The notes beneath the pieces are model-generated. The model saw only the letters and a list, made by a program, of their open reading frames with translations. It was not told the origin of the DNA and searched no databases. A program made the translations under genes and the position numbers. Below, one piece after another: positions 22,936-30,650 of a stretch of DNA of 64,000 bases. Numbering within the stretch: position 1 is the stretch's first letter; each line of letters opens with the position of its first letter. Location of the stretch: NCBI RefSeq assembly GCF_000006765.1, contig NC_002516.2. One strand, written 5' to 3'. The DNA comes from Pseudomonas aeruginosa PAO1 (lineage in GTDB: Bacteria; Pseudomonadota; Gammaproteobacteria; Pseudomonadales; Pseudomonadaceae).

Positions 22936-23047
22936 CGGTAGTCGGCTCCGGAAGAACAGGCCAGGCATTCTAGCCCACTCCGCCCCGTCGCTCCGCGCTC
23001 CAGCGAAACTGGGCTAGCCTGAGGGAACCTTTCGACGGAGAGCCTTC

Positions 23048-23461
23048 ATGCGCCCGATGTACGCCGTAGCGATCCTTTTCCTCCTGGCCGGCTGTTCCTC
23101 GGTTCCCGCCGAGAAGACCCGGGCGATCCCCGCCGAACGCCTGCTCGGCTACCAGCAACCGGTGAGCGGTGGCGGCCGGCTGGAAGTCCACCGCGACTAT
23201 GGCTACCTGGGCGGCGGCTGCTACGTGGCGTTCCTTATCGACCGCCAGGTCGCCGCGCGCATCGGCGTCGGCGAGGAAGCCAGCTTCCAGGTGCCGGCGG
23301 GCGAGCATGTGGTCGGTATCGGCATCGATACCCAGGACGACACCCTCTGCGGCAAGGGCCTGCTGAACCGCGAGCTGAGAACCCGGATCGCCGCGGACGG
23401 CAACGCGCGCTTCCGCATCGTCAGCGAGGCCAGCAGCGGGTTCGACATCCGCGCCGAATGA
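23048..23461 (+). CDS. Hypothetical lipoprotein (PA3289-like)
   Basis: Lipobox LLAGC; small beta-sandwich-like mature domain. Confidence 0.75.
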   Translation: MRPMYAVAILFLLAGCSSVPAEKTRAIPAERLLGYQQPVSGGGRLEVHRDYGYLGGGCYVAFLIDRQVAARIGVGEEASFQVPAGEHVVGIGIDTQDDTLCGKGLLNRELRTRIAADGNARFRIVSEASSGFDIRAE

Positions 23462-23499
23462 TCCGGGGCGACAGGTCGGCCGCGTTCGCCGGTCGAGGT

Positions 23500-26148
23500 T
23501 CAAAGCGATTCCATCAGGTCCTTGCCGCGCTTTAGCCAGCCCGGCGCCGAGCCGGGGCCCGGCGGTTGCGCCTGCTCCGTGCCCATGTCCTGCAAGGCCT
23601 GCTTCGCCTCGGCGAGCCAGGCCGGGGTCGCCGCCGCGGGCGCCTGGGTGAGTTCGGCCTTGGCCACCAGCCCGGCCAGGCTGCCCAGGTCGCGCGCCTT
23701 GAGCGCCTCCACGGTCTGCTGAGCCAGCAGCACCTGCTGCAATGCGGGCGATTGCACCGCCGCGACCGCCAGCGGCGGCGGTGGCGGCAACTGGCCGATC
23801 TGCTCGACCTTGTCGCCAGGCTCGCGGGTGAAGGCCCGCAGGTTGTCCAGCGCCGCCCCGCCGACCATCGGCAAGGCGATCCCGGTCAGCGGGTCGAAGG
23901 CGCTGATCTCCGGCAGGCCGACCTTGCCGCTCAGCAGCGGACGCGCCAGCGATGGCAGGAACAGCCCGAGCAGCATCCGCGGATCGCGACGCTTGACGCT
24001 GAGGCCGACGCTGGCCAGCATCACCCCGACGCCTACCACCCGCCCGGCGGTGGCCAGTACCGAGAGCCGCTTGTTCGACTCGTTGTCGAAATGCACCAGG
24101 CGATAGCGGAAGTAGTCGGTGAAAGGTTCTCGCGGGCCTATCGCCGAAGTGTTCATGAACCAGGCGCGGGAGTCGTGCACCTGTTCGTCGAACAGCGCCA
24201 CCAGTTTTTCCTGGCCCGGCGCCACCCGGTCGGGAGCGCTGAACAACTGGTGGTAGCGCGCGCTGCCGTCGCGGTGGATCTGGCTGTATTCCTCGGCTTC
24301 GTCTTCCTCGTTGATCAGGAATACGGTGCCGCCGAGCAGCAGGTCGATCACTCCGCCCACCGTCATGCCGTCGTCGAGCACGCCCCAGTCGCCCTTGTAG
24401 TCATGGGCGAATTCGGCGGCGGCGCCGAGCAGTTGGCGCTGGTCCAGCGGCGGGTCGAACTGCTTCTCCACCCGCAGGTCGCGCAGTTGGTCCTCGCCGC
24501 CGATCAGCGCCACGTTGCGATCCCACTCCGCCTGTTCGGCGGCGCTCATCGGCGGGAGCGGCTCGCCCTGCTGGGCGGCCGCGTACTCCCGGCTACGCCG
24601 CTTGTGCAGGGCCTCCCAGGCCTTCTGCTGGGCTTCCGGCATGTCCGGCGGGACATTGGCGAAGAACGCCTTGTTGCGCAGCCCGCCGGCATAGCGGTCG
24701 ATGCGCCAGGCGGTGATCAACGCGGTCTCGCGACGGATCACCTCTTCCAGGGGGCCGGCCTTGGCCTGGGCCTGCCAGGCGTTGAAACGGGTGGCGAGTT
24801 CTTCGGAGACGCTGAACTCCGCTTCAATCTTGGGCACCATTACCCGCCACTCTTCATGAAAGTCTGGATGGACGGCAGGTGCTGGAACTTGCAAAGGAGC
24901 ACCTGCCTCGAAAGCCTCCGCATACATATGCTGCAACGCTATCTGGGATAGTAGAAATTCCGAACCTCCCACAGCTTTCCCCTGGTTGCCGACGCCATAA
25001 CCGCCACCAACATCCGAGTGAACACCAGGATAAGCATATTCCACCGTCCACTTCCGGTAGCAGGAGGGCCCCGTCCGACGTCCGTTGGCATCCATGTCAC
25101 GACGGCGGATCGAATCGAGTGGAAAACTGGCACGCTGCTCATGACAGGAAACCAGATGCACGCAACGTTTCAGAAAAGAACAGTCTTCCGGCAGGATGGT
25201 CGGCAGGCACTGGGAGAGGGCCTCATCGGGCAGGCGCATGGTGTCATCGGCCCAATCCATATGCCCGGCAGCGAACGGCGCACTATCCGCCAGCCCAACT
25301 GCCGCCACGGTATCGAAAAGGCCGAGGAACTCGATCGAGATCGGCAGACCGGCAAAGCGATATTCCACCCGACCATCGGCATCGCTGACCCGGGTTAGCT
25401 CCTGCAGCCAGTTGGCAAAGGCTCGTGCTTCTGCCGCCCCACGGGAGAATCCGTAGATATACAAGCGCATGGCCAGGATATGCGGTTTCTGTCCAGAGTT
25501 CTGACGCTGTCGAAGCTTTTCTTCCAGTTCCTTGAGTTTTGGCTCCAAGGCAGCTCGGCGTTTTTTCTCGCCGTTTTCCAATAAACCACCAGTGAGCGTA
25601 CTGACGGTCCAGTTAGTGGACATTTCTTCTACTAGGCCCTGAACATCATTTAGTTTAAGCCTACTTTTTAATAAAGTATAGAAAAGAGCATCAACTAACT
25701 GAACCAGCCCCCAGTTTATTCGATTTTCGCCTCCCTCAGCACCAATTAATCCCATGTTTGAAGGCGTAAATTCTTTAATATCCGGAAACACCGTACCCAC
25801 ACCTGGGCAATAGTACTTAAAAATCCCCCTACTGTTTATATCATCGCCGCTCCCAATACTTGCATGAATTAGCCTAGCGACATTACTGCAAGATGGAGAA
25901 ACCGATGAACCATCAGCCTTATCGTTATTATTAGTCCCATCAAAACCAAGTGTAATATGGATAGCTTTACAGCAAGGCGCACCACCGACTACGTCACCTT
26001 CAGAAAGCCTTTTTTGCTCTTGCGCCCTTGAAAAAACCCGTTCATCGCTCTGCTGCTTTAATATATTTTCTGATAATTTTTTAGAATCATAAGTCAGGCG
26101 CCCTGCCACAGGATGGGTGGGTGCTATATGAAATCCAAAATTAGGCAT
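23500..26148 (-). CDS. tle1: T6SS phospholipase effector Tle1 (DUF2235)
   Basis: FDGTNNN, YYCPGVGT, YGFSRGAAEAR (GxSxG), FLGLFDTV, HEQR, GVHSDVGGGY; sits in a vgrG-DUF4123-immunity context. Confidence 0.93.
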   Translation of the reverse strand: MPNFGFHIAPTHPVAGRLTYDSKKLSENILKQQSDERVFSRAQEQKRLSEGDVVGGAPCCKAIHITLGFDGTNNNDKADGSSVSPSCSNVARLIHASIGSGDDINSRGIFKYYCPGVGTVFPDIKEFTPSNMGLIGAEGGENRINWGLVQLVDALFYTLLKSRLKLNDVQGLVEEMSTNWTVSTLTGGLLENGEKKRRAALEPKLKELEEKLRQRQNSGQKPHILAMRLYIYGFSRGAAEARAFANWLQELTRVSDADGRVEYRFAGLPISIEFLGLFDTVAAVGLADSAPFAAGHMDWADDTMRLPDEALSQCLPTILPEDCSFLKRCVHLVSCHEQRASFPLDSIRRRDMDANGRRTGPSCYRKWTVEYAYPGVHSDVGGGYGVGNQGKAVGGSEFLLSQIALQHMYAEAFEAGAPLQVPAPAVHPDFHEEWRVMVPKIEAEFSVSEELATRFNAWQAQAKAGPLEEVIRRETALITAWRIDRYAGGLRNKAFFANVPPDMPEAQQKAWEALHKRRSREYAAAQQGEPLPPMSAAEQAEWDRNVALIGGEDQLRDLRVEKQFDPPLDQRQLLGAAAEFAHDYKGDWGVLDDGMTVGGVIDLLLGGTVFLINEEDEAEEYSQIHRDGSARYHQLFSAPDRVAPGQEKLVALFDEQVHDSRAWFMNTSAIGPREPFTDYFRYRLVHFDNESNKRLSVLATAGRVVGVGVMLASVGLSVKRRDPRMLLGLFLPSLARPLLSGKVGLPEISAFDPLTGIALPMVGGAALDNLRAFTREPGDKVEQIGQLPPPPPLAVAAVQSPALQQVLLAQQTVEALKARDLGSLAGLVAKAELTQAPAAATPAWLAEAKQALQDMGTEQAQPPGPGSAPGWLKRGKDLMESL

Positions 26149-26162
26149 CTTCCCACCTGCCT

Positions 26163-26717
26163 TCAGTTAGCCGGACATATCGTTGACTTTCTCATCTCGA
26201 AATAGGCCTTATCAGGATATTTTGGATGATTCGGCCCATAACAAGTCGTAGAAACAGCCACCTCGTCACACGGCAAGAAGTGCACCTGCAGCAAGCACAC
26301 CTTTTCATCATACCTAGGCACATTCACAGTCGCCTTGTGACGGGTGTAACTTGAGGCATGCCTCAAATAATCACTCTCATCCAACCGCCCATATTTATCT
26401 CGTTTTATAACGGCACGGGGATTTGGATCCTTCTCCCATTCCACAATAACTTTCAAATTTGGATTCCATCTCTTTGGAATTACCCCACAACAAACTTGAC
26501 TACCATCTCCCTGATAAGGACCTAAGTTCGGTCCGCCAGCACCATTCACCGTAAATTCGTTAATCGCCGCCGAAGTATGGTTGTAACCCATGACAGGTGC
26601 AGACAGCACTTCAGGCCCAGCTTGGCATGCCACCAGCCCAAAGAAGGTGCTGAGAAAAACCACCAACCCAATGGACTTTTTAGTTCCCACACAGATCAAA
26701 CTCATCAACTTCTGCAT
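26163..26717 (-). CDS. tli1: Tli1-family immunity lipoprotein (DUF3304), copy 3, intact and adjacent to tle1
   Basis: Lipobox LVAC; GYNHTSAAI..F.VNG; VCC; VEWE; VHFLPCD. Confidence 0.88.
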   Translation of the reverse strand: MQKLMSLICVGTKKSIGLVVFLSTFFGLVACQAGPEVLSAPVMGYNHTSAAINEFTVNGAGGPNLGPYQGDGSQVCCGVIPKRWNPNLKVIVEWEKDPNPRAVIKRDKYGRLDESDYLRHASSYTRHKATVNVPRYDEKVCLLQVHFLPCDEVAVSTTCYGPNHPKYPDKAYFEMRKSTICPAN

Positions 26718-27256
26718 GACATACCCCTCATATCAAAGTAACCTTTATTCGGATATTCAGGATGAAACGGCGCATAACAGGCAGCTGAAGTAGCAACCTT
26801 ATCACATGGAAGAAATTGTATTTTTAGCGAACAAATCTCCTTACTATCACAAGGAGGTATATCGACGACTTCCTTATGACGAACATACAAGAGCCCATGC
26901 TCTCTCATACGTTTTCTCCAGCCATCTGAAAATATCTTTCCGGCCAGTCTTTATAAGCCCCTGGCTCAGGAACTACCTCCCACTCTACGGTTGCCTTCAA
27001 GCCCGACTTCCAAACTCTAGGAACGACACCACAACATACCTGCCCTGCTCCCCCCTGAAATGGACCAAGGTTTAATCCGCCAGCACCATTTACACTGAAT
27101 CTGTTAATAGCCGCCGAAGTATGGTTGTATCCTCCGATAGGAGTAGACACCATATCAGAGCCTGCCTGACACGCTTGTAAAAACAAAAAACCTATCAGTA
27201 AAGCAATCAGCCAATCAGGTGTCCTTAACCCCTTTGCATTCAAGAGCTTTTTGCAT
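26705..27256 (-). pseudogene. Tli1 paralogue copy 2, broken by two single-base indels in homopolymer runs
   Basis: Removing one A at 27248-52 and adding one T at 26929-32 restores a 183-aa ORF, MQKLLNAK...LQAC...YFSDGWRKRMREH...SCRS. Confidence 0.75.
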
Positions 27257-27762
27257 GAAGGCTCTCTCTTCTGAAAATACTTTCTAACTGGGTACTCTGG
27301 ATGCCCCTGGCTGTAATAGGTTGTTGAGACCGCGACCTGGTCACACGGGAGGAAATGCACCTGCAACAGGCATATTTTTTCACTATATCTAGGTATATCC
27401 ACGATCATCTTGTGTCGGGTGTAGCTTGAGGCATGTCTCAAGTAATCATCTTTATCCAGCCGTCCATATTTATCTCGCCTTATAGCGGCGTGCGGTTTGG
27501 GATCTTTCTCCCATTCCACGACAGCTTTCAAATTTGGATTCCACTTCTTTGGAATCACTCCGCAACAAACCTGGCTACCATCCCCCTGATAAGGGCCTAA
27601 ACGCGGTCCACCCGCCCCATTCACCGAAAACCAATTGATCGCCGCGGACGTATGGTTGTAACCCATCACCGGCGCCGCCAGCATGTCCGGCCCGCTCTGG
27701 CAGCTCGCGGCCAGCAGGGGCCCCGGAAGCAGGGCGGGAAGGCCGATGCCGCGCCCGTTCAT
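26905..27762 (-). CDS. Tli1 paralogue copy 1, read through into the N-terminal half of copy 2 (285-aa fusion)
   Basis: Start MNGRGIG overlaps the DUF4123 stop (ATGA). A full DUF3304 domain is followed in frame by a second signal peptide and a partial DUF3304. Confidence 0.75.
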   Translation of the reverse strand: MNGRGIGLPALLPGPLLAASCQSGPDMLAAPVMGYNHTSAAINWFSVNGAGGPRLGPYQGDGSQVCCGVIPKKWNPNLKAVVEWEKDPKPHAAIRRDKYGRLDKDDYLRHASSYTRHKMIVDIPRYSEKICLLQVHFLPCDQVAVSTTYYSQGHPEYPVRKYFQKREPSCKKLLNAKGLRTPDWLIALLIGFLFLQACQAGSDMVSTPIGGYNHTSAAINRFSVNGAGGLNLGPFQGGAGQVCCGVVPRVWKSGLKATVEWEVVPEPGAYKDWPERYFQMAGENV

Positions 27763-28574
27763 GCGCGACTCGTTCCCGCCGGGGAAAAGCCGGGGCCGGG
27801 GGTCTGTTCGCGTAGCCATTGGGCGACGAAGGCATCGCGCTGGTCGAAGTCCTGCAAGCCCTGGCGGTCGGCGGCCAGGTGCGCCTGGACCAGATGCTGG
27901 AGCAGGCTTTCCTGGCTGCCCAGTCCATGCTCGCGGGGCAGCACGAAGTATTCGCGGCGGTAGGCTTCGGCCTCGCTCCAGGCGCGCAAGGCAGCGACCT
28001 GGTGCGCTTCCAGGCGGAGGGCCGCTTGCAGCGGCGGCGTCTCGTGGGCCTGGTAATGACCGGCCAGCGCCCTCGGCCGGCCGTCGCGGTCCAGCCAGTG
28101 CCAGCTGGAAACCGGGGCATGCAGGTAACAGCTCTGCCGGGGATCGAGCATGTCGCTGACGGCCATGAACAGGCCCGGCTCGTAGAAACGCAGTACGCCG
28201 CTGGAACGACCCTGGTTCCACTCGGCCTGGGTGCAGCTGCGCAGGTGCTCGCCCAGGCGCGGCAACGGCCAGGGGCTGAACAGGAGCATCAGGTGGCGGC
28301 GGCAGTCGATGCGTTCGAGCAGTTCGTCCAGCCAGGCCGCGTGGCCGTCTTCCAGGCGCAGCAGCAGCGGGCCCTCGTCGGCCAGGGCGGCCTCCGGGGT
28401 TTGCTCCAGCAATTTGAACAGCGCCGGAGGATCGCTTTGCCGCGCATGCTCGGCGAGCAAGGGATAGTCGTCCAGCCCGGTGGCATCGACCAATACATCG
28501 ATGTGGGTCTGCAAGCCGCGATCGCGGGAGCGCTGCCACAGCTCGCGGGCCCAATGGCGGGGGTTCGGCGTCAT
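27759..28574 (-). CDS. DUF4123 T6SS effector adaptor/chaperone
   Basis: LVDAT, GPLLL, LGEHLR...VLRFYEP; located between vgrG and the effector module. Confidence 0.85.
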   Translation of the reverse strand: MTPNPRHWARELWQRSRDRGLQTHIDVLVDATGLDDYPLLAEHARQSDPPALFKLLEQTPEAALADEGPLLLRLEDGHAAWLDELLERIDCRRHLMLLFSPWPLPRLGEHLRSCTQAEWNQGRSSGVLRFYEPGLFMAVSDMLDPRQSCYLHAPVSSWHWLDRDGRPRALAGHYQAHETPPLQAALRLEAHQVAALRAWSEAEAYRREYFVLPREHGLGSQESLLQHLVQAHLAADRQGLQDFDQRDAFVAQWLREQTPGPGFSPAGTSRA

Positions 28575-28583
28575 CGCGGTTCC

Positions 28584-30650
28584 TCAGCGCTCGGCGAGCG
28601 CCTGGCCTCTTTTCTTCGCCTGTAGCAGGCACTCTTCGCAGACCGGTTGCCGCGGCGGCAGGTTGGCCGCGACCGCCTCGGGTGGCGCGCCGGAGCTGTC
28701 CTGGTCGGCCATGCCCGGCACCCGCGGCATCTTGATCGCGATCCCCGAGCCGCTTCCCGGCGCGCCGCCTGCATTGATCCGTGCCAGCGGGCCGCTGATG
28801 GCGATGCCGCTTGCGTCGAGCCGGATGAAGCTGCCGCCGGCCGTCACCGTCAGTTCGCTGTCAGCCTCGATCACCATCTTCTGCCCGGCCTTCAGGTGGA
28901 TCTCGCGCCCGGCCCTGGCCAGGTAGGCACGACCGAGCTTCACGTGCTGGCTGTCGCCGACCGTCAGGTGGTCATCGGCCTTCAGCTCGACCTTGCGCTC
29001 TCCGTGCACGGTGTGATGCTCCTCGGCCTTGAACTCGCTGTAGCTGTTCGCCTCCACGGTGTCGTGGCGTTCGTGGCCGACGCGGATCTTCTGGTCGTGC
29101 TCGATGTTCTCGTCCCAGTCGCGCTGGGCATGGACGAAGATCTGTTCCTGGCCCTTGCGATCCTCGATGCGCAGCTCGTTGTAGCCACCGCCGCCAGGGC
29201 TGCTGAGGCTCTTGAAGACGCTGCGGGTCTGGTTCGCCGGCAACTCGTAGGGCACCGGGTGGGCGGCGTGGTAGACGCAGCCGCTGACCAGCGGCTGGTC
29301 GGGATCGCCTTCGAGGAAGTCCACCAGCACTTCCATGCCGACCCGCGGAATGACGATGCCGCCATAGCCGTTGCCGGCCCAACCGCTGGCTACGCGCAGC
29401 CAGCAACTGCTCTTGTCGTCGCCCTGGCCCTCGCGGTCCCAGTGGAACTGCACCCTGACCCAGCCGTAGCGGTCGCAGTGGATTTCCTCGCCTGGCGGGC
29501 CGGTCACCACCGCGGTCTGGCTGCCCAGCACGCGCGGCTTCGGGTGCTCCAGCGGCGGGCGGAAGAACACCTCCCAGGGCGTCGCGAGGAAGCGGTTGCG
29601 GTAGCCCTGCTGGAAGTCGTCCGTGCTGGCCGACGTGTCGGAGGTAACGTTCTCTTCCAGCACCTGCGGCTGCTTGCCTTCGTGGAAGACTTCGCTGAGC
29701 AGCCACAGGTCGTTCCACTCCGCGCGCGGGTGCTCGGCGATCTCCAGGAAGTGCCCGCTGACCAGCAGCGGCTGGTCGCTGACCCCTTCGCCCAGGCGCC
29801 GGTCGGCGCGGTGCCGCTCCAGGGCGCGCTGGCTGAGCAGCTTGCCGCGCTGGCGATCGACGAAGCGACCGGGGTAGTCGTAGTCCTCCAGGTCCGGCTC
29901 GGCCGGGGCGTCGGCAGCGGGGCGATTGCCGGCCTCCAGCAGCAGCCGCGGCTTCTCGAAGTCGTAGTCGCGGCGAGTGGTGCGCGTGGTGCGGCTGGCC
30001 AGGCGCAGGCTGAAGCGCTTGATCACCGGTTCGTCGGCGACCAGCCCGCTGTCGTGCACGTAGGCGGTGGGACGGCCCAGGCGGGGGAACACCGTCTGGT
30101 CGTCGCCGAACACCAGCAGGTGCGCCTCGGCGCTGTGCCGGAAATGGAAATGGATGCCCTCTTCGGCACAGAGGCGCTGGACGAAATGCAGGTCGCTTTC
30201 GTCGTACTGCACGCAGTATTCGCGCTCGGGATACCGGGTGCCGAGCTGGAAGCGGTAGGCGTCGGCGAGGATGCCGTGCTCCTCGAGGATCAGGGCGACG
30301 ATCTGCGGCACCGTGAGGTGCTGGAAGATCCGCTGGTTGTTGCGCTGGGCGAGGTAGGCCAGGTGTGGGACGAGGGTGAGGCGATAGCGGGTCAGGCGCT
30401 TGCCGGCATCGCCCTGGGCAGCGCCGTAGACCAGGCCGTGGACACCCTGGCCCTGCGGGGTGAAGGCGAGGAAGGCGGGTCGGTGCATGAGTGCTTCGAG
30501 GTCGAGGCCGGCGCGCTCGCTGACCAGTTCGAGTTCGAAGCGGTAGGGCCGGCTGATGCCTTCGTGGCCGCTGAATTCGAGAACCTGCAGGTCGTGACGG
30601 AGGCCGTCGAGGCTGAGGCTGAAGTGGGTCTGGTTGGCCGGGTTGAACAT
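28584..30650 (-). CDS. vgrG: T6SS spike protein VgrG (VgrG4a-like, PA3294)
   Basis: EGISRPYRFELEL, YCVQYDESDLHFVQRL..EEG, IPRVGMEVLVDFLEGDPDQP, NELRIED, gp5-like repeats. Confidence 0.95.
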   Translation of the reverse strand: MFNPANQTHFSLSLDGLRHDLQVLEFSGHEGISRPYRFELELVSERAGLDLEALMHRPAFLAFTPQGQGVHGLVYGAAQGDAGKRLTRYRLTLVPHLAYLAQRNNQRIFQHLTVPQIVALILEEHGILADAYRFQLGTRYPEREYCVQYDESDLHFVQRLCAEEGIHFHFRHSAEAHLLVFGDDQTVFPRLGRPTAYVHDSGLVADEPVIKRFSLRLASRTTRTTRRDYDFEKPRLLLEAGNRPAADAPAEPDLEDYDYPGRFVDRQRGKLLSQRALERHRADRRLGEGVSDQPLLVSGHFLEIAEHPRAEWNDLWLLSEVFHEGKQPQVLEENVTSDTSASTDDFQQGYRNRFLATPWEVFFRPPLEHPKPRVLGSQTAVVTGPPGEEIHCDRYGWVRVQFHWDREGQGDDKSSCWLRVASGWAGNGYGGIVIPRVGMEVLVDFLEGDPDQPLVSGCVYHAAHPVPYELPANQTRSVFKSLSSPGGGGYNELRIEDRKGQEQIFVHAQRDWDENIEHDQKIRVGHERHDTVEANSYSEFKAEEHHTVHGERKVELKADDHLTVGDSQHVKLGRAYLARAGREIHLKAGQKMVIEADSELTVTAGGSFIRLDASGIAISGPLARINAGGAPGSGSGIAIKMPRVPGMADQDSSGAPPEAVAANLPPRQPVCEECLLQAKKRGQALAER

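What the first reader, a model, noticed from the sequence alone, without database searches (positions are those of the whole stretch)
26705..27762. Two single-base homopolymer slips fuse and break the Tli1 immunity array (possible phase-variable switch)
Seen in sequence: at the copy1/copy2 junction the minus strand reads TCA TGC AAAAA GCTCTTGA. With A4 instead of A5, copy 1 would stop (SCKSS*), and an overlapping ATG would start copy 2 as MQKLLNAK...LQAC. This mirrors the intact copy2/copy3 junction (TCATGCAGAAGTTGA, SCRS* overlapping MQKL). A second slip (T4 instead of T5 at 26929-32) turns YFSDGWRKRMREH into YFQMAGENV*. The two compensating indels give a 285-aa fusion plus an orphan 67-aa tail; reverting both restores three lipoproteins of about 175-185 aa. 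Inference: either decay of a non-cognate immunity gene or a reversible slipped-strand switch controlling the immunity repertoire.
Basis: seen in the sequence. Interest (0 to 1): 0.7.

Follow-up and report, generated by a model that had tools for sequence, protein, structure and literature searches.

The report
Decayed Tli1 immunity genes in PAO1
In the PAO1 reference genome, two of the three tandem immunity genes next to the antibacterial toxin gene tle1 are broken by fixed single-base frameshifts; this is ordinary gene decay, partly published already, not an on/off switch.

Summary
On the minus strand the window carries vgrG4a, tla1, three tandem Tli1-family (DUF3304) lipoprotein genes and tle1. 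Over the 8.5 kb compared, the locus is 100% identical to P. aeruginosa PAO1. Only the tle1-proximal gene (tli1a, PA3291, 184 aa) is intact. Two single-base length changes of opposite sign, each in a homopolymer run of 5 nt or less, fuse the first gene to the front of the middle gene (285-aa ORF, PA3292) and leave a 67-aa tail ORF.

The first change is already published (JBC 2026, PMC13133936). That paper proposes PA3292 is a pseudogene and could not detect its protein.

The phase-switch reading is not supported:
- The longest run in the array is 6 nt.
- The middle-gene break is shared by PAO1-, PA14- and PAK-type haplotypes that differ by 1-3%.
- The middle-gene pieces evolve neutrally (pN/pS about 1, against 0.1-0.3 for the neighbouring genes).
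- Other lineages carry further, different lesions.
- The fused allele travels with a private substitution and was never seen unfused on its own background.

Intact three-gene arrays (173/183/184 aa) exist in a minority of strains. Their middle gene is 96% identical to the tle1-adjacent immunity gene of strains with a different Tle1 N-terminus. The middle gene is therefore best read as a decayed orphan immunity gene.

The parts
28584..30650 (-). vgrG4a (PA3294 in PMC13133936), 688 aa, T6SS spike protein
   Evidence: TIGR03361 at 672 bits; Pfam Phage_GPD, Phage_base_V and Gp5_trimer_C.
27759..28574 (-). tla1 (PA3293), 271 aa, DUF4123 adaptor/chaperone for Tle1. Its stop overlaps the next start by 4 nt.
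   Evidence: NF053803 Tla1 equivalog at 235.6 bits (cut-off 200); PF13503. ORF bounds.
26905..27762 (-). First immunity gene as it stands, the annotated 285-aa ORF PA3292 ('tli1b'). It holds a complete Tli1/DUF3304 unit that has lost its own stop through one frameshift and runs on into the front part of the middle gene.
   Evidence: Stand-alone 173-aa alleles occur in other strains. Described as a probable pseudogene with undetectable protein in PMC13133936.
26705..27256 (-). Middle immunity gene remnant, first base to last (552 nt, the same span as the intact 183-aa gene of L030/L031). It is broken by two frameshifts, with no nonsense substitution and no large indel. One frameshift is the change that also removes the first gene's stop. 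Its rear part is the 67-aa ORF.
   Evidence: The pieces are 79-80% (front) and 70-76% (rear) identical to intact 183/185-aa proteins.
26163..26717 (-). tli1a (PA3291), 184 aa, the intact cognate immunity lipoprotein of Tle1. Its start overlaps the stop of the 67-aa ORF by 13 nt.
   Evidence: NF053804 at 187 bits over the full profile. The exact protein is on at least 1000 contigs. It binds Tle1 and sits in the outer membrane according to PMC13133936.
23500..26148 (-). tle1 (PA3290), 882 aa, antibacterial T6SS phospholipase effector. Its first ~250 codons are hypervariable between strains.
   Evidence: PF22137 (E = 2e-147) and PF09994. Allele comparison.
25400..27600 (.). Low-GC block (42-47% against 64-74% in the flanks). 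It covers the mature parts of all three immunity genes and the 5' end of tle1, and it coincides with the region that differs most between haplotypes.

Best explanation
This is the vgrG4a-tla1-tli1-tle1 island of P. aeruginosa PAO1. Its ancestral form is a tightly overlapping, probably translationally coupled array of three Tli1-family outer-membrane lipoprotein genes (173, 183 and 184 aa) upstream of tle1.

Only the tle1-proximal gene, tli1a, is the working immunity gene for the resident Tle1. This was shown by others.

The middle gene is an orphan. Its intact relatives are the tle1-adjacent immunity genes of strains whose Tle1 has a different N-terminal 250 residues. It acquired one single-base frameshift before the PAO1-, PA14- and PAK-type haplotypes diverged, and it has drifted neutrally since.

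Later, in the PAO1-type lineage only, a second single-base change in a short run removed the first gene's stop. This fused the first gene to the front of the dead middle gene and gave the 285-aa ORF PA3292.

Both changes look like ordinary replication slippage in runs of 5 nt or less, fixed by descent. They are not a regulated or high-frequency switch.

Shown here or by others: the anatomy, the population distribution, the relaxed constraint, and the missing protein (literature). Inferred: the order of events, the orphan-immunity origin, and loss of function of the first gene in PAO1.
For: - Family and context.
- Identity to PAO1 AE004091.2: 100% over 8496 nt.
- Publication: PMC13133936 reports the single-nucleotide insertion in PA3292 relative to PA14. 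It also reports no Tli1b-V5 signal in PAO1 or E. coli, no two-hybrid contact with Tle1, and Tli1a binding Tle1 in the outer membrane.
- One difference from PA14-type: one gap column in 8161 nt, so the middle-gene break is shared between the two types.
- Shared tail: every three-gene locus of the PAO1, PA14, PAK and L010 types, and all 4 metagenomic P. aeruginosa loci, carries the 67-aa tail ORF.
- Relaxed constraint: window against PA14-type gives middle-gene pieces 3 synonymous to 12 non-synonymous changes (pN/pS 1.0-1.5). The same comparison gives first gene 0.29, tli1a 0.28, tla1 0.11 and the rest of tle1 0.17.
- Further lesions: 78-aa, 85-aa, 71-aa and 60+128-aa pieces of the middle gene occur in other lineages, and PAK has an independent fusion of 253 aa.
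- Intact arrays: 173/183/184 aa in L030 and L031, whose flanks are 98.2-98.7% identical to the window.
- Orphan link: the L030 middle protein is 96% identical to the tle1-adjacent 185-aa protein of two-gene arrays. The Tle1 of those arrays is 71-74% identical to PAO1 Tle1 over residues 61-250 and 98-99% identical over the last 432 residues.
- Single origin of the fusion: 20 of 20 stand-alone first-gene proteins differ from the fused allele at one private residue, and the other 285-aa variant keeps that residue.
- Related loci of other species carry up to three intact tandem DUF3304 genes after tla1.
Against: - The substitution counts behind pN/pS are small (15 changes in the middle gene).
- Loci were fetched by exact-protein look-ups, which are biased towards the state of the query.
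- Only 35 P. aeruginosa loci were read at DNA level. The contig counts are inflated by repeated sequencing of laboratory PAO1.
- NCBI annotation hides frameshifted genes as pseudogenes without proteins, so protein counts under-report broken alleles.
- The first gene's domain is complete in the fusion. The published failure to detect it used a C-terminal tag, so a processed N-terminal product is not excluded.
- No intact member of the PAO1/PA14/PAK allele class of the middle gene was found. The claim that this class was ever functional rests on relatives that are 84% identical at DNA level.
Confidence: 0.85

Rival explanations
1. Reversible phase-variable (contingency) switch. Slipped-strand changes in the two runs would turn the first and middle immunity genes on and off and so vary the immunity repertoire within a clone.
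For: - Both length changes lie in homopolymer runs, although only 7% of array bases lie in runs of 4 nt or more.
- The two changes are of opposite sign.
- Both states of the first gene are common in the species.
- From my own knowledge, 5-nt runs can be mutational hot spots in P. aeruginosa (the mucA22 site), especially in mismatch-repair mutants.
Against: - The runs are 5 nt or shorter, and the longest run in the array is 6 nt. There are no repeat tracts of 3-6 nt units with 4 or more copies, and only one dinucleotide tract. From my own knowledge, known homopolymer contingency tracts are usually 7-8 nt or longer.
- The middle-gene break is fixed in every haplotype of its allele class.
- Its pieces evolve at pN/pS of about 1.
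- Extra lesions in several lineages mean that one reversal would not restore the gene there.
- All 24 contigs read that carry the PAO1-type tail are fused.
- The fused state is in complete linkage with a private substitution.
Confidence: 0.04
2. Sequencing or assembly artefact in the reference sequence.
For: Homopolymer length errors are common in some platforms. Some fetched assemblies clearly carry such noise: L023 has 13 gap columns in 8.2 kb.
Against: - The exact 285-aa protein is on 888 contigs and the exact 67-aa tail on at least 1000, from NCBI, ENA and Logan assemblies.
- The fused allele is also present in strains 38-50 substitutions away from PAO1 over 8.5 kb.
- PMC13133936 reports the same PA3292 frameshift from a PAO1/PA14 comparison and built its Tli1b constructs on that ORF.
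Confidence: 0.01
3. The 285-aa fusion is a working protein. Either it is a two-domain immunity lipoprotein, or it carries a still-functional first domain.
For: - The first Tli1 unit is complete (profile positions 4-152 of 155) with its signal peptide.
- The first gene is under purifying selection between haplotypes (pN/pS 0.29).
- The fused allele has persisted in a clade with about 0.5% divergence at the locus.
- The published detection used a C-terminal tag only.
Against: - Tli1b was not detected in PAO1 or E. coli and showed no two-hybrid contact with Tle1.
- The extension holds an internal signal-peptide-like hydrophobic stretch and only about 60% of a DUF3304 unit.
- According to PMC13133936, InterPro lists only 9 two-DUF3304 proteins against 2360 single-domain ones.
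Confidence: 0.07

Closest known systems
PA3292 'tli1b' of PAO1 as described in PMC13133936 (J Biol Chem 2026; preprint 10.64898/2025.12.24.696360)
   Same: It is this very locus. The paper reports a single-nucleotide insertion in an A-rich stretch relative to PA14_21470 and an extended ORF with a second, shorter DUF3304. The protein was undetectable and the authors propose a pseudogene. Tli1a (PA3291) is the working immunity protein.
   Different: The paper treats the locus as two immunity genes. A text search found no mention of a third gene, the tail ORF, orphan immunity, slippage or phase variation. The analysis here adds four things:
- the three-gene reading;
- the older shared break in the middle gene;
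- natural intact three-gene arrays;
- the link of the middle gene to another Tle1 allele class.
Orphan immunity genes in T6SS, CDI and Rhs loci (V. cholerae auxiliary clusters, Bacteroidales acquired interbacterial defence, E. coli/Salmonella rhs and cdi orphan modules). Mostly from my own knowledge; Bacteroidales orphan immunity is in PMC10470768.
   Same: Tandem immunity paralogs lie next to one effector. The non-adjacent copies resemble the cognate immunity genes of other strains' effector alleles.
   Different: In most P. aeruginosa strains the orphan is dead rather than protective. No displaced effector fragment accompanies it. Protection by the intact versions has not been tested.
Second, truncated tli1 next to tle1 in enteroaggregative E. 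coli, as cited in PMC13133936
   Same: A Tle1 locus with two immunity candidates, where one suffices and the other carries an inactivating mutation.
   Different: The immunity proteins may belong to a different family (I did not check), and the lesion is different. I did not examine that locus.
Simple-sequence contingency loci of Neisseria, Haemophilus, Campylobacter and Helicobacter (my own knowledge)
   Same: Single-base length change in a homopolymer alters the reading frame of a surface-related gene.
   Different: - Those tracts are long (usually 7-8 nt or more) and vary within clones.
- Their ON frame is kept under selection.
- All three features were tested here and not met.
mucA22-type homopolymer hot spot in P. 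aeruginosa (my own knowledge)
   Same: A one-base change in a 5-nt run that recurs as a mutation and becomes fixed in lineages.
   Different: mucA22 is selected during chronic infection and recurs many times. Here the PAO1-type change appears to have a single origin.

Membership tests
Tli1 / DUF3304 immunity lipoproteins (NCBIfam NF053804, Pfam PF11745) | Profile match above the curated cut-off | tested here: met
   The 285-aa ORF scores 268 bits and the 184-aa ORF 187 bits, against a cut-off of 110. The 67-aa ORF scores 53.6 bits, below the cut-off, but matches profile positions 91-149.
Tli1 / DUF3304 immunity lipoproteins (NCBIfam NF053804, Pfam PF11745) | N-terminal lipoprotein signal peptide with a lipobox cysteine | tested here: inconclusive
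   A hydrophobic stretch followed by Cys is visible at the head of all three units. I ran no signal-peptide predictor. PMC13133936 reports SignalP 6.0 lipoprotein signals for PA3291 and PA3292.
Tli1 / DUF3304 immunity lipoproteins (NCBIfam NF053804, Pfam PF11745) | Linkage to tle1 with vgrG and a DUF4123 adaptor | tested here: met
   The genes vgrG, tla1, the three tli1 units and tle1 are contiguous on one strand with overlapping stops and starts.
Tli1 / DUF3304 immunity lipoproteins (NCBIfam NF053804, Pfam PF11745) | Binds and neutralises Tle1 | not testable with these tools
   From the literature, Tli1a binds Tle1, while Tli1b (the 285-aa ORF) showed no contact and no protein. Neutralisation could not be shown even for Tli1a in E. 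coli.
Phase-variable contingency locus (simple-sequence repeat) | Hypermutable repeat tract of sufficient length in or before the ORF | tested here: not met
   The two changes lie in runs of 5 and 4 nt. The longest run in the 1600-nt array is 6 nt. There are no tracts of 3-6 nt units with 4 or more copies.
Phase-variable contingency locus (simple-sequence repeat) | Tract length varies within otherwise identical lineages | tested here: not met
   All 24 contigs read that carry the PAO1-type tail are fused (6 checked at DNA level). All 20 stand-alone first-gene proteins are on other backgrounds. The sample is limited and partly biased.
Phase-variable contingency locus (simple-sequence repeat) | The ON reading frame is kept intact by purifying selection | tested here: not met
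   The middle-gene pieces have pN/pS of 1.0-1.5, and several lineages carry extra lesions. For the first gene alone the test is inconclusive (0.29 between haplotypes, too little divergence within the fused clade).
Orphan immunity gene | A close relative is the effector-adjacent immunity gene in other strains | tested here: met
   The intact middle gene of L030 is 96% identical to the tle1-adjacent 185-aa protein of the two-gene arrays L005-L007. The window's pieces are 70-80% identical.
Orphan immunity gene | The matching effector allele is absent from the same genome | tested here: inconclusive
   The resident tle1 belongs to another N-terminal class (71-74% identity over residues 61-250). 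Only a 64-kb window was available, so the rest of the genome was not checked.
Orphan immunity gene | Protects against non-kin effector alleles | not testable with these tools
   No functional data are available for any middle-gene allele.
Pseudogene | Frame disrupted relative to intact orthologues, with relaxed constraint and no product | tested here: met
   The array carries two frameshifts relative to L030/L031, and the middle gene evolves neutrally. The absence of PA3292 protein comes from the literature. Absence of a middle-gene product was not tested.

The most novel reading that the evidence does not exclude
The broken genes may be kept as a tiled chain of overlapping ORFs because translation of the essential tli1a depends on termination-reinitiation through them. 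The overlaps are tla1/285-aa ORF 4 nt, 285-aa/67-aa ORF 4 nt, and 67-aa ORF/tli1a 13 nt. If so, only frameshifts that preserve the chain can be fixed. A weaker variant is that, in mismatch-repair-deficient lineages, the short run at the first gene's end changes often enough to act as a slow, population-level toggle of the first immunity gene.
Probability: 0.1. Interest if true: 0.5.

Novelty: already known. Interest (0 to 1): 0.22.

Why it matters
The matter is mostly one of annotation and experimental design.

PA3292 in the reference strain PAO1 is not a second Tle1 immunity protein. It is a fusion of one immunity gene with the front of a dead one. Work that uses it as 'Tli1b' studies an artefact of decay, and strains with stand-alone genes are the natural material for studying the first and middle genes.

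The wider point is modest. Tle1 is counted as a core effector of P. aeruginosa (PMC11751169). In the 35 loci read here, however, it comes in at least four N-terminal classes, each with its own adjacent immunity gene. Some strains also keep an extra immunity gene that matches another class. That could bear on kin discrimination between strains. The idea of orphan immunity genes and their decay is well established.

Tried and rejected
- **Metagenome scan with Tla1.** It returned only 4 P. aeruginosa loci, too few for allele frequencies. It was still useful for showing intact arrays in other species.
- **Rfam scan of 22-32 kb.** Nothing reached the gathering score.
- **Exact-protein look-ups.** Each returns loci that share the query's state, so they cannot give unbiased frequencies. 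Only the 67-aa look-up is independent of the junction state.
- I guessed the index of the private residue wrongly and got 0 of 20. redid the count properly: one residue differs in 20 of 20.
- MAFFT reported a third, 2-nt gap block against L030/L031. This is an end-of-extract artefact, because the gene spans are equal.
- **Extra lesions seen only in single long-read-like assemblies (L021, L023).** These may be assembly noise and carry no weight. Lesions seen on many contigs (78-aa piece on 275 contigs; 85-aa piece in L010, L011, L033 and L035) do carry weight.
- **Programmed frameshifting or transcriptional slippage.** I considered these as a way to read through the breaks. No long run exists to support slippage, and I did not pursue the idea.
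- **Not run.** Structure prediction of the fusion (it would not discriminate between the explanations) and the genome-contig scan (one genome per species cannot show variation within a species).
Full report
**What is there.** On the minus strand the window carries five gene units in a row:
- vgrG (28584-30650, 688 aa);
- a DUF4123 gene that meets the NCBIfam equivalog for the Tle1 chaperone Tla1 (27759-28574);
- three tandem units of the Tli1a family (NF053804; Pfam DUF3304);
- tle1 (23500-26148, 882 aa; Pfam Tle1 catalytic and C-terminal domains).

Over 8496 bases the locus is 100% identical to P. aeruginosa PAO1 (AE004091.2, 3.68 Mb). The genes are therefore PA3294 to PA3290.

**The observation.** It holds.
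- The first ORF is 285 aa. It contains a complete Tli1 unit (profile positions 4-152 of 155) followed by the front part of a second unit.
- A 67-aa ORF supplies the rear of that second unit (profile positions 91-149).
- The third unit is the intact 184-aa PA3291.
- The three units align along their whole length at 76% mean column identity.

Relative to natural arrays with three intact genes (173, 183 and 184 aa; L030 and L031), the window has two single-base length differences, in runs of 5 and 4 nt. They are of opposite sign, because the middle gene spans 552 nt from start codon to stop in both. The count is therefore:
- first gene: one frameshift;
- middle gene: two frameshifts, one of them the same change, which lies in the overlap of the two genes;
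- no nonsense substitutions and no large insertion or deletion.

Only 7% of array bases lie in runs of 4 nt or more, so slippage is the likely mutational origin of both changes.

**Not an artefact.** The exact 285-aa protein is recorded on 888 contigs and the exact 67-aa protein on at least 1000. The fused allele also occurs in strains that differ from PAO1 by 38-50 substitutions over 8.5 kb (L012, L014, L015, L020). The published study reports the same PA3292 frameshift from a PAO1/PA14 comparison and built its Tli1b constructs on that ORF.

**Already known.** PMC13133936 (J Biol Chem 2026; preprint December 2025) names PA3291 Tli1a and PA3292 Tli1b. Its relevant results are:
- Tli1a binds Tle1 and is an outer-membrane lipoprotein.
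- Tli1b could not be detected in PAO1 or in E. coli and gave no two-hybrid signal.
- An alignment with PA14_21470 suggested the insertion of one nucleotide in an A-rich stretch, which extends the ORF and adds a second, shorter DUF3304.
- The authors propose that PA3292 is a pseudogene.

A text search of that paper found no mention of a third gene, the tail ORF, orphan immunity, slippage or phase variation.

**Population picture.** I read 31 loci fetched through exact-protein look-ups and 4 P. aeruginosa loci from metagenomes. Five architectures appeared.
- **A, PAO1-type:** fusion, 67-aa tail, 184 aa, tle1 of 882 aa. Loci L012-L024, 99.2-100% identical to the window.
- **B, PA14-type:** 173 aa, 116 aa, 67 aa, 184 aa. 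It is 98.6% identical to the window and differs by one gap column in 8161 bases.
- **C, PAK and relatives:** the 67-aa tail plus further lesions in the middle gene. PAK also has a different fusion of 253 aa that involves two gap columns and is identical in two independent PAK assemblies. These loci carry a 183-aa third gene and another tle1 class.
- **D, two-gene arrays:** 173 aa and 185 aa next to tle1 of 867, 884 or 886 aa.
- **E, three intact genes:** L030 and L031. L026 is like E, but its middle gene is broken in yet another way.

The flanks of D and E are 98.2-98.7% identical to the window, so they belong to the same species. Every three-gene locus of types A to C, and all four metagenomic loci, has the 67-aa tail. 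The middle-gene break therefore predates the split of these haplotypes, which differ by 1-3%.

Stand-alone first genes are the majority state: one allele alone is on at least 1000 contigs.

In more distant species, loci with a Tla1 relative carry one to three intact tandem DUF3304 genes. An intact array is therefore the normal condition.

**Switch or decay.** Five results speak for decay.
1. The runs are 5 nt or shorter. The longest run in the array is 6 nt, and there are no repeat tracts of 3-6 nt units with 4 or more copies. From my own knowledge, known homopolymer contingency tracts are usually 7-8 nt or longer.
2. Between the PAO1 and PA14 types, the middle-gene pieces show 3 synonymous and 12 non-synonymous differences (pN/pS 1.0-1.5). 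The same comparison gives first gene 0.29, tli1a 0.28, tla1 0.11 and the rest of tle1 0.17. The counts are small but the direction is consistent.
3. At least four further lesion patterns of the middle gene exist in other lineages: 78-aa, 85-aa, 71-aa and 60+128-aa pieces.
4. The look-up by the 67-aa tail does not depend on the junction state. The 24 longest contigs it read all carry the fusion: 6 were checked at DNA level and the other 18 were filed by the tool as similar places.
5. All 20 stand-alone first-gene proteins examined differ from the fused allele at one residue that both 285-aa variants keep. This points to a single origin without reversal.

**What the middle gene was.**
- The intact middle protein of L030 is 96% identical to the tle1-adjacent 185-aa protein of the two-gene arrays.
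- The Tle1 of those arrays is 98-99% identical to PAO1 Tle1 over the last 432 residues. It is only 71-74% identical over residues 61-250 and 30-43% over the first 60.
- At DNA level the first 750 nt of tle1 are 73-77% identical between types, with 13-15 gap columns.
- This hypervariable stretch and the immunity genes together form a low-GC block (42-47% against 64-74%).

I infer at least four effector-immunity classes, and I infer that the middle gene of three-gene arrays is an orphan immunity gene for another class. Most of the species has let it decay. Its function was not tested.

**Mechanism and order of events (inferred).**
- The ancestral array had three overlapping genes.
- A single-base slip in the middle gene became fixed in the ancestor of the PAO1/PA14/PAK allele class.
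- The middle gene then drifted neutrally and picked up further lesions.
- In the PAO1-type lineage a second slip removed the first gene's stop.

The fused product carries an internal signal-peptide-like stretch and about 60% of a second domain, and it is not detectable. A processed first domain is not excluded, because the published tag was C-terminal.

**An untested side idea.** The stops and starts overlap all along the array: 4 nt, 4 nt and 13 nt. Ribosome flow to tli1a may therefore survive both breaks.

**Limits.**
- The sample is small and partly biased.
- Contig counts are inflated by resequencing of laboratory PAO1.
- Some assemblies are noisy (L023, and possibly L021).
- No raw reads could be inspected.
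- No signal-peptide predictor was run.

**Verdict.** The decay reading is supported and the switch reading is not. The main break is already in the literature. The three-gene, orphan-immunity reading and the Tle1 allele classes are small additions of a known kind.

Noticed in passing
window 25400-26148 (tle1 5' end); loci L005, L006, L009, L025, L030: Tle1 comes in at least four N-terminal classes. Identity is 30-43% over the first 60 residues and 71-74% over residues 61-250, against 98-99% over the last 432. Each class has its own adjacent immunity gene (184, 183, or two kinds of 185 aa). PMC11751169 counts Tle1 as a core effector, and its main text mentions no classes.
   Followed up: partly
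window 25400-27600: A low-GC block (42-47% against 64-74% in the flanks) runs from inside the first immunity gene to about codon 250 of tle1. It matches the part of the island that differs most between haplotypes. This suggests a cassette of foreign composition exchanged by recombination.
   Followed up: partly
window 26705-27762 and 28574: Stops and starts overlap along the whole chain: tla1/285-aa ORF 4 nt, 285-aa/67-aa ORF 4 nt, and 67-aa ORF/tli1a 13 nt. Translational coupling to tli1a may therefore persist despite the breaks.
   Followed up: no
L008/L009 (PAK, CP020659 and LR657304), L032: PAK carries an independent fusion of the first and middle genes (253 aa), made by different length changes from PAO1's. 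A metagenomic contig (L032) shows yet another fused form. The first gene's end has therefore been hit more than once.
   Followed up: partly
L002, L011, L016, L017, L023: Some assemblies show broken vgrG, tla1 or tle1 calls at this locus. Examples are tle1 as 668+212 aa in L002, vgrG in three pieces in L016, and tla1 as 135 aa in L017. I did not determine whether these are real lesions or assembly noise.
   Followed up: no
L037, L039, L040, L041 (metagenome contigs, Tla1 42-49% identical): Related loci of other bacteria carry three intact tandem DUF3304 genes after the adaptor gene. Multi-gene Tli1 arrays are therefore widespread outside P. aeruginosa.
   Followed up: no
window 22970-23503 (-) and 23048-23461 (+): Just downstream of tle1, public annotations call a 137-aa gene on the opposite strand with no Pfam family. 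A 177-aa ORF on the tle1 strand also has no family hit.
   Followed up: no
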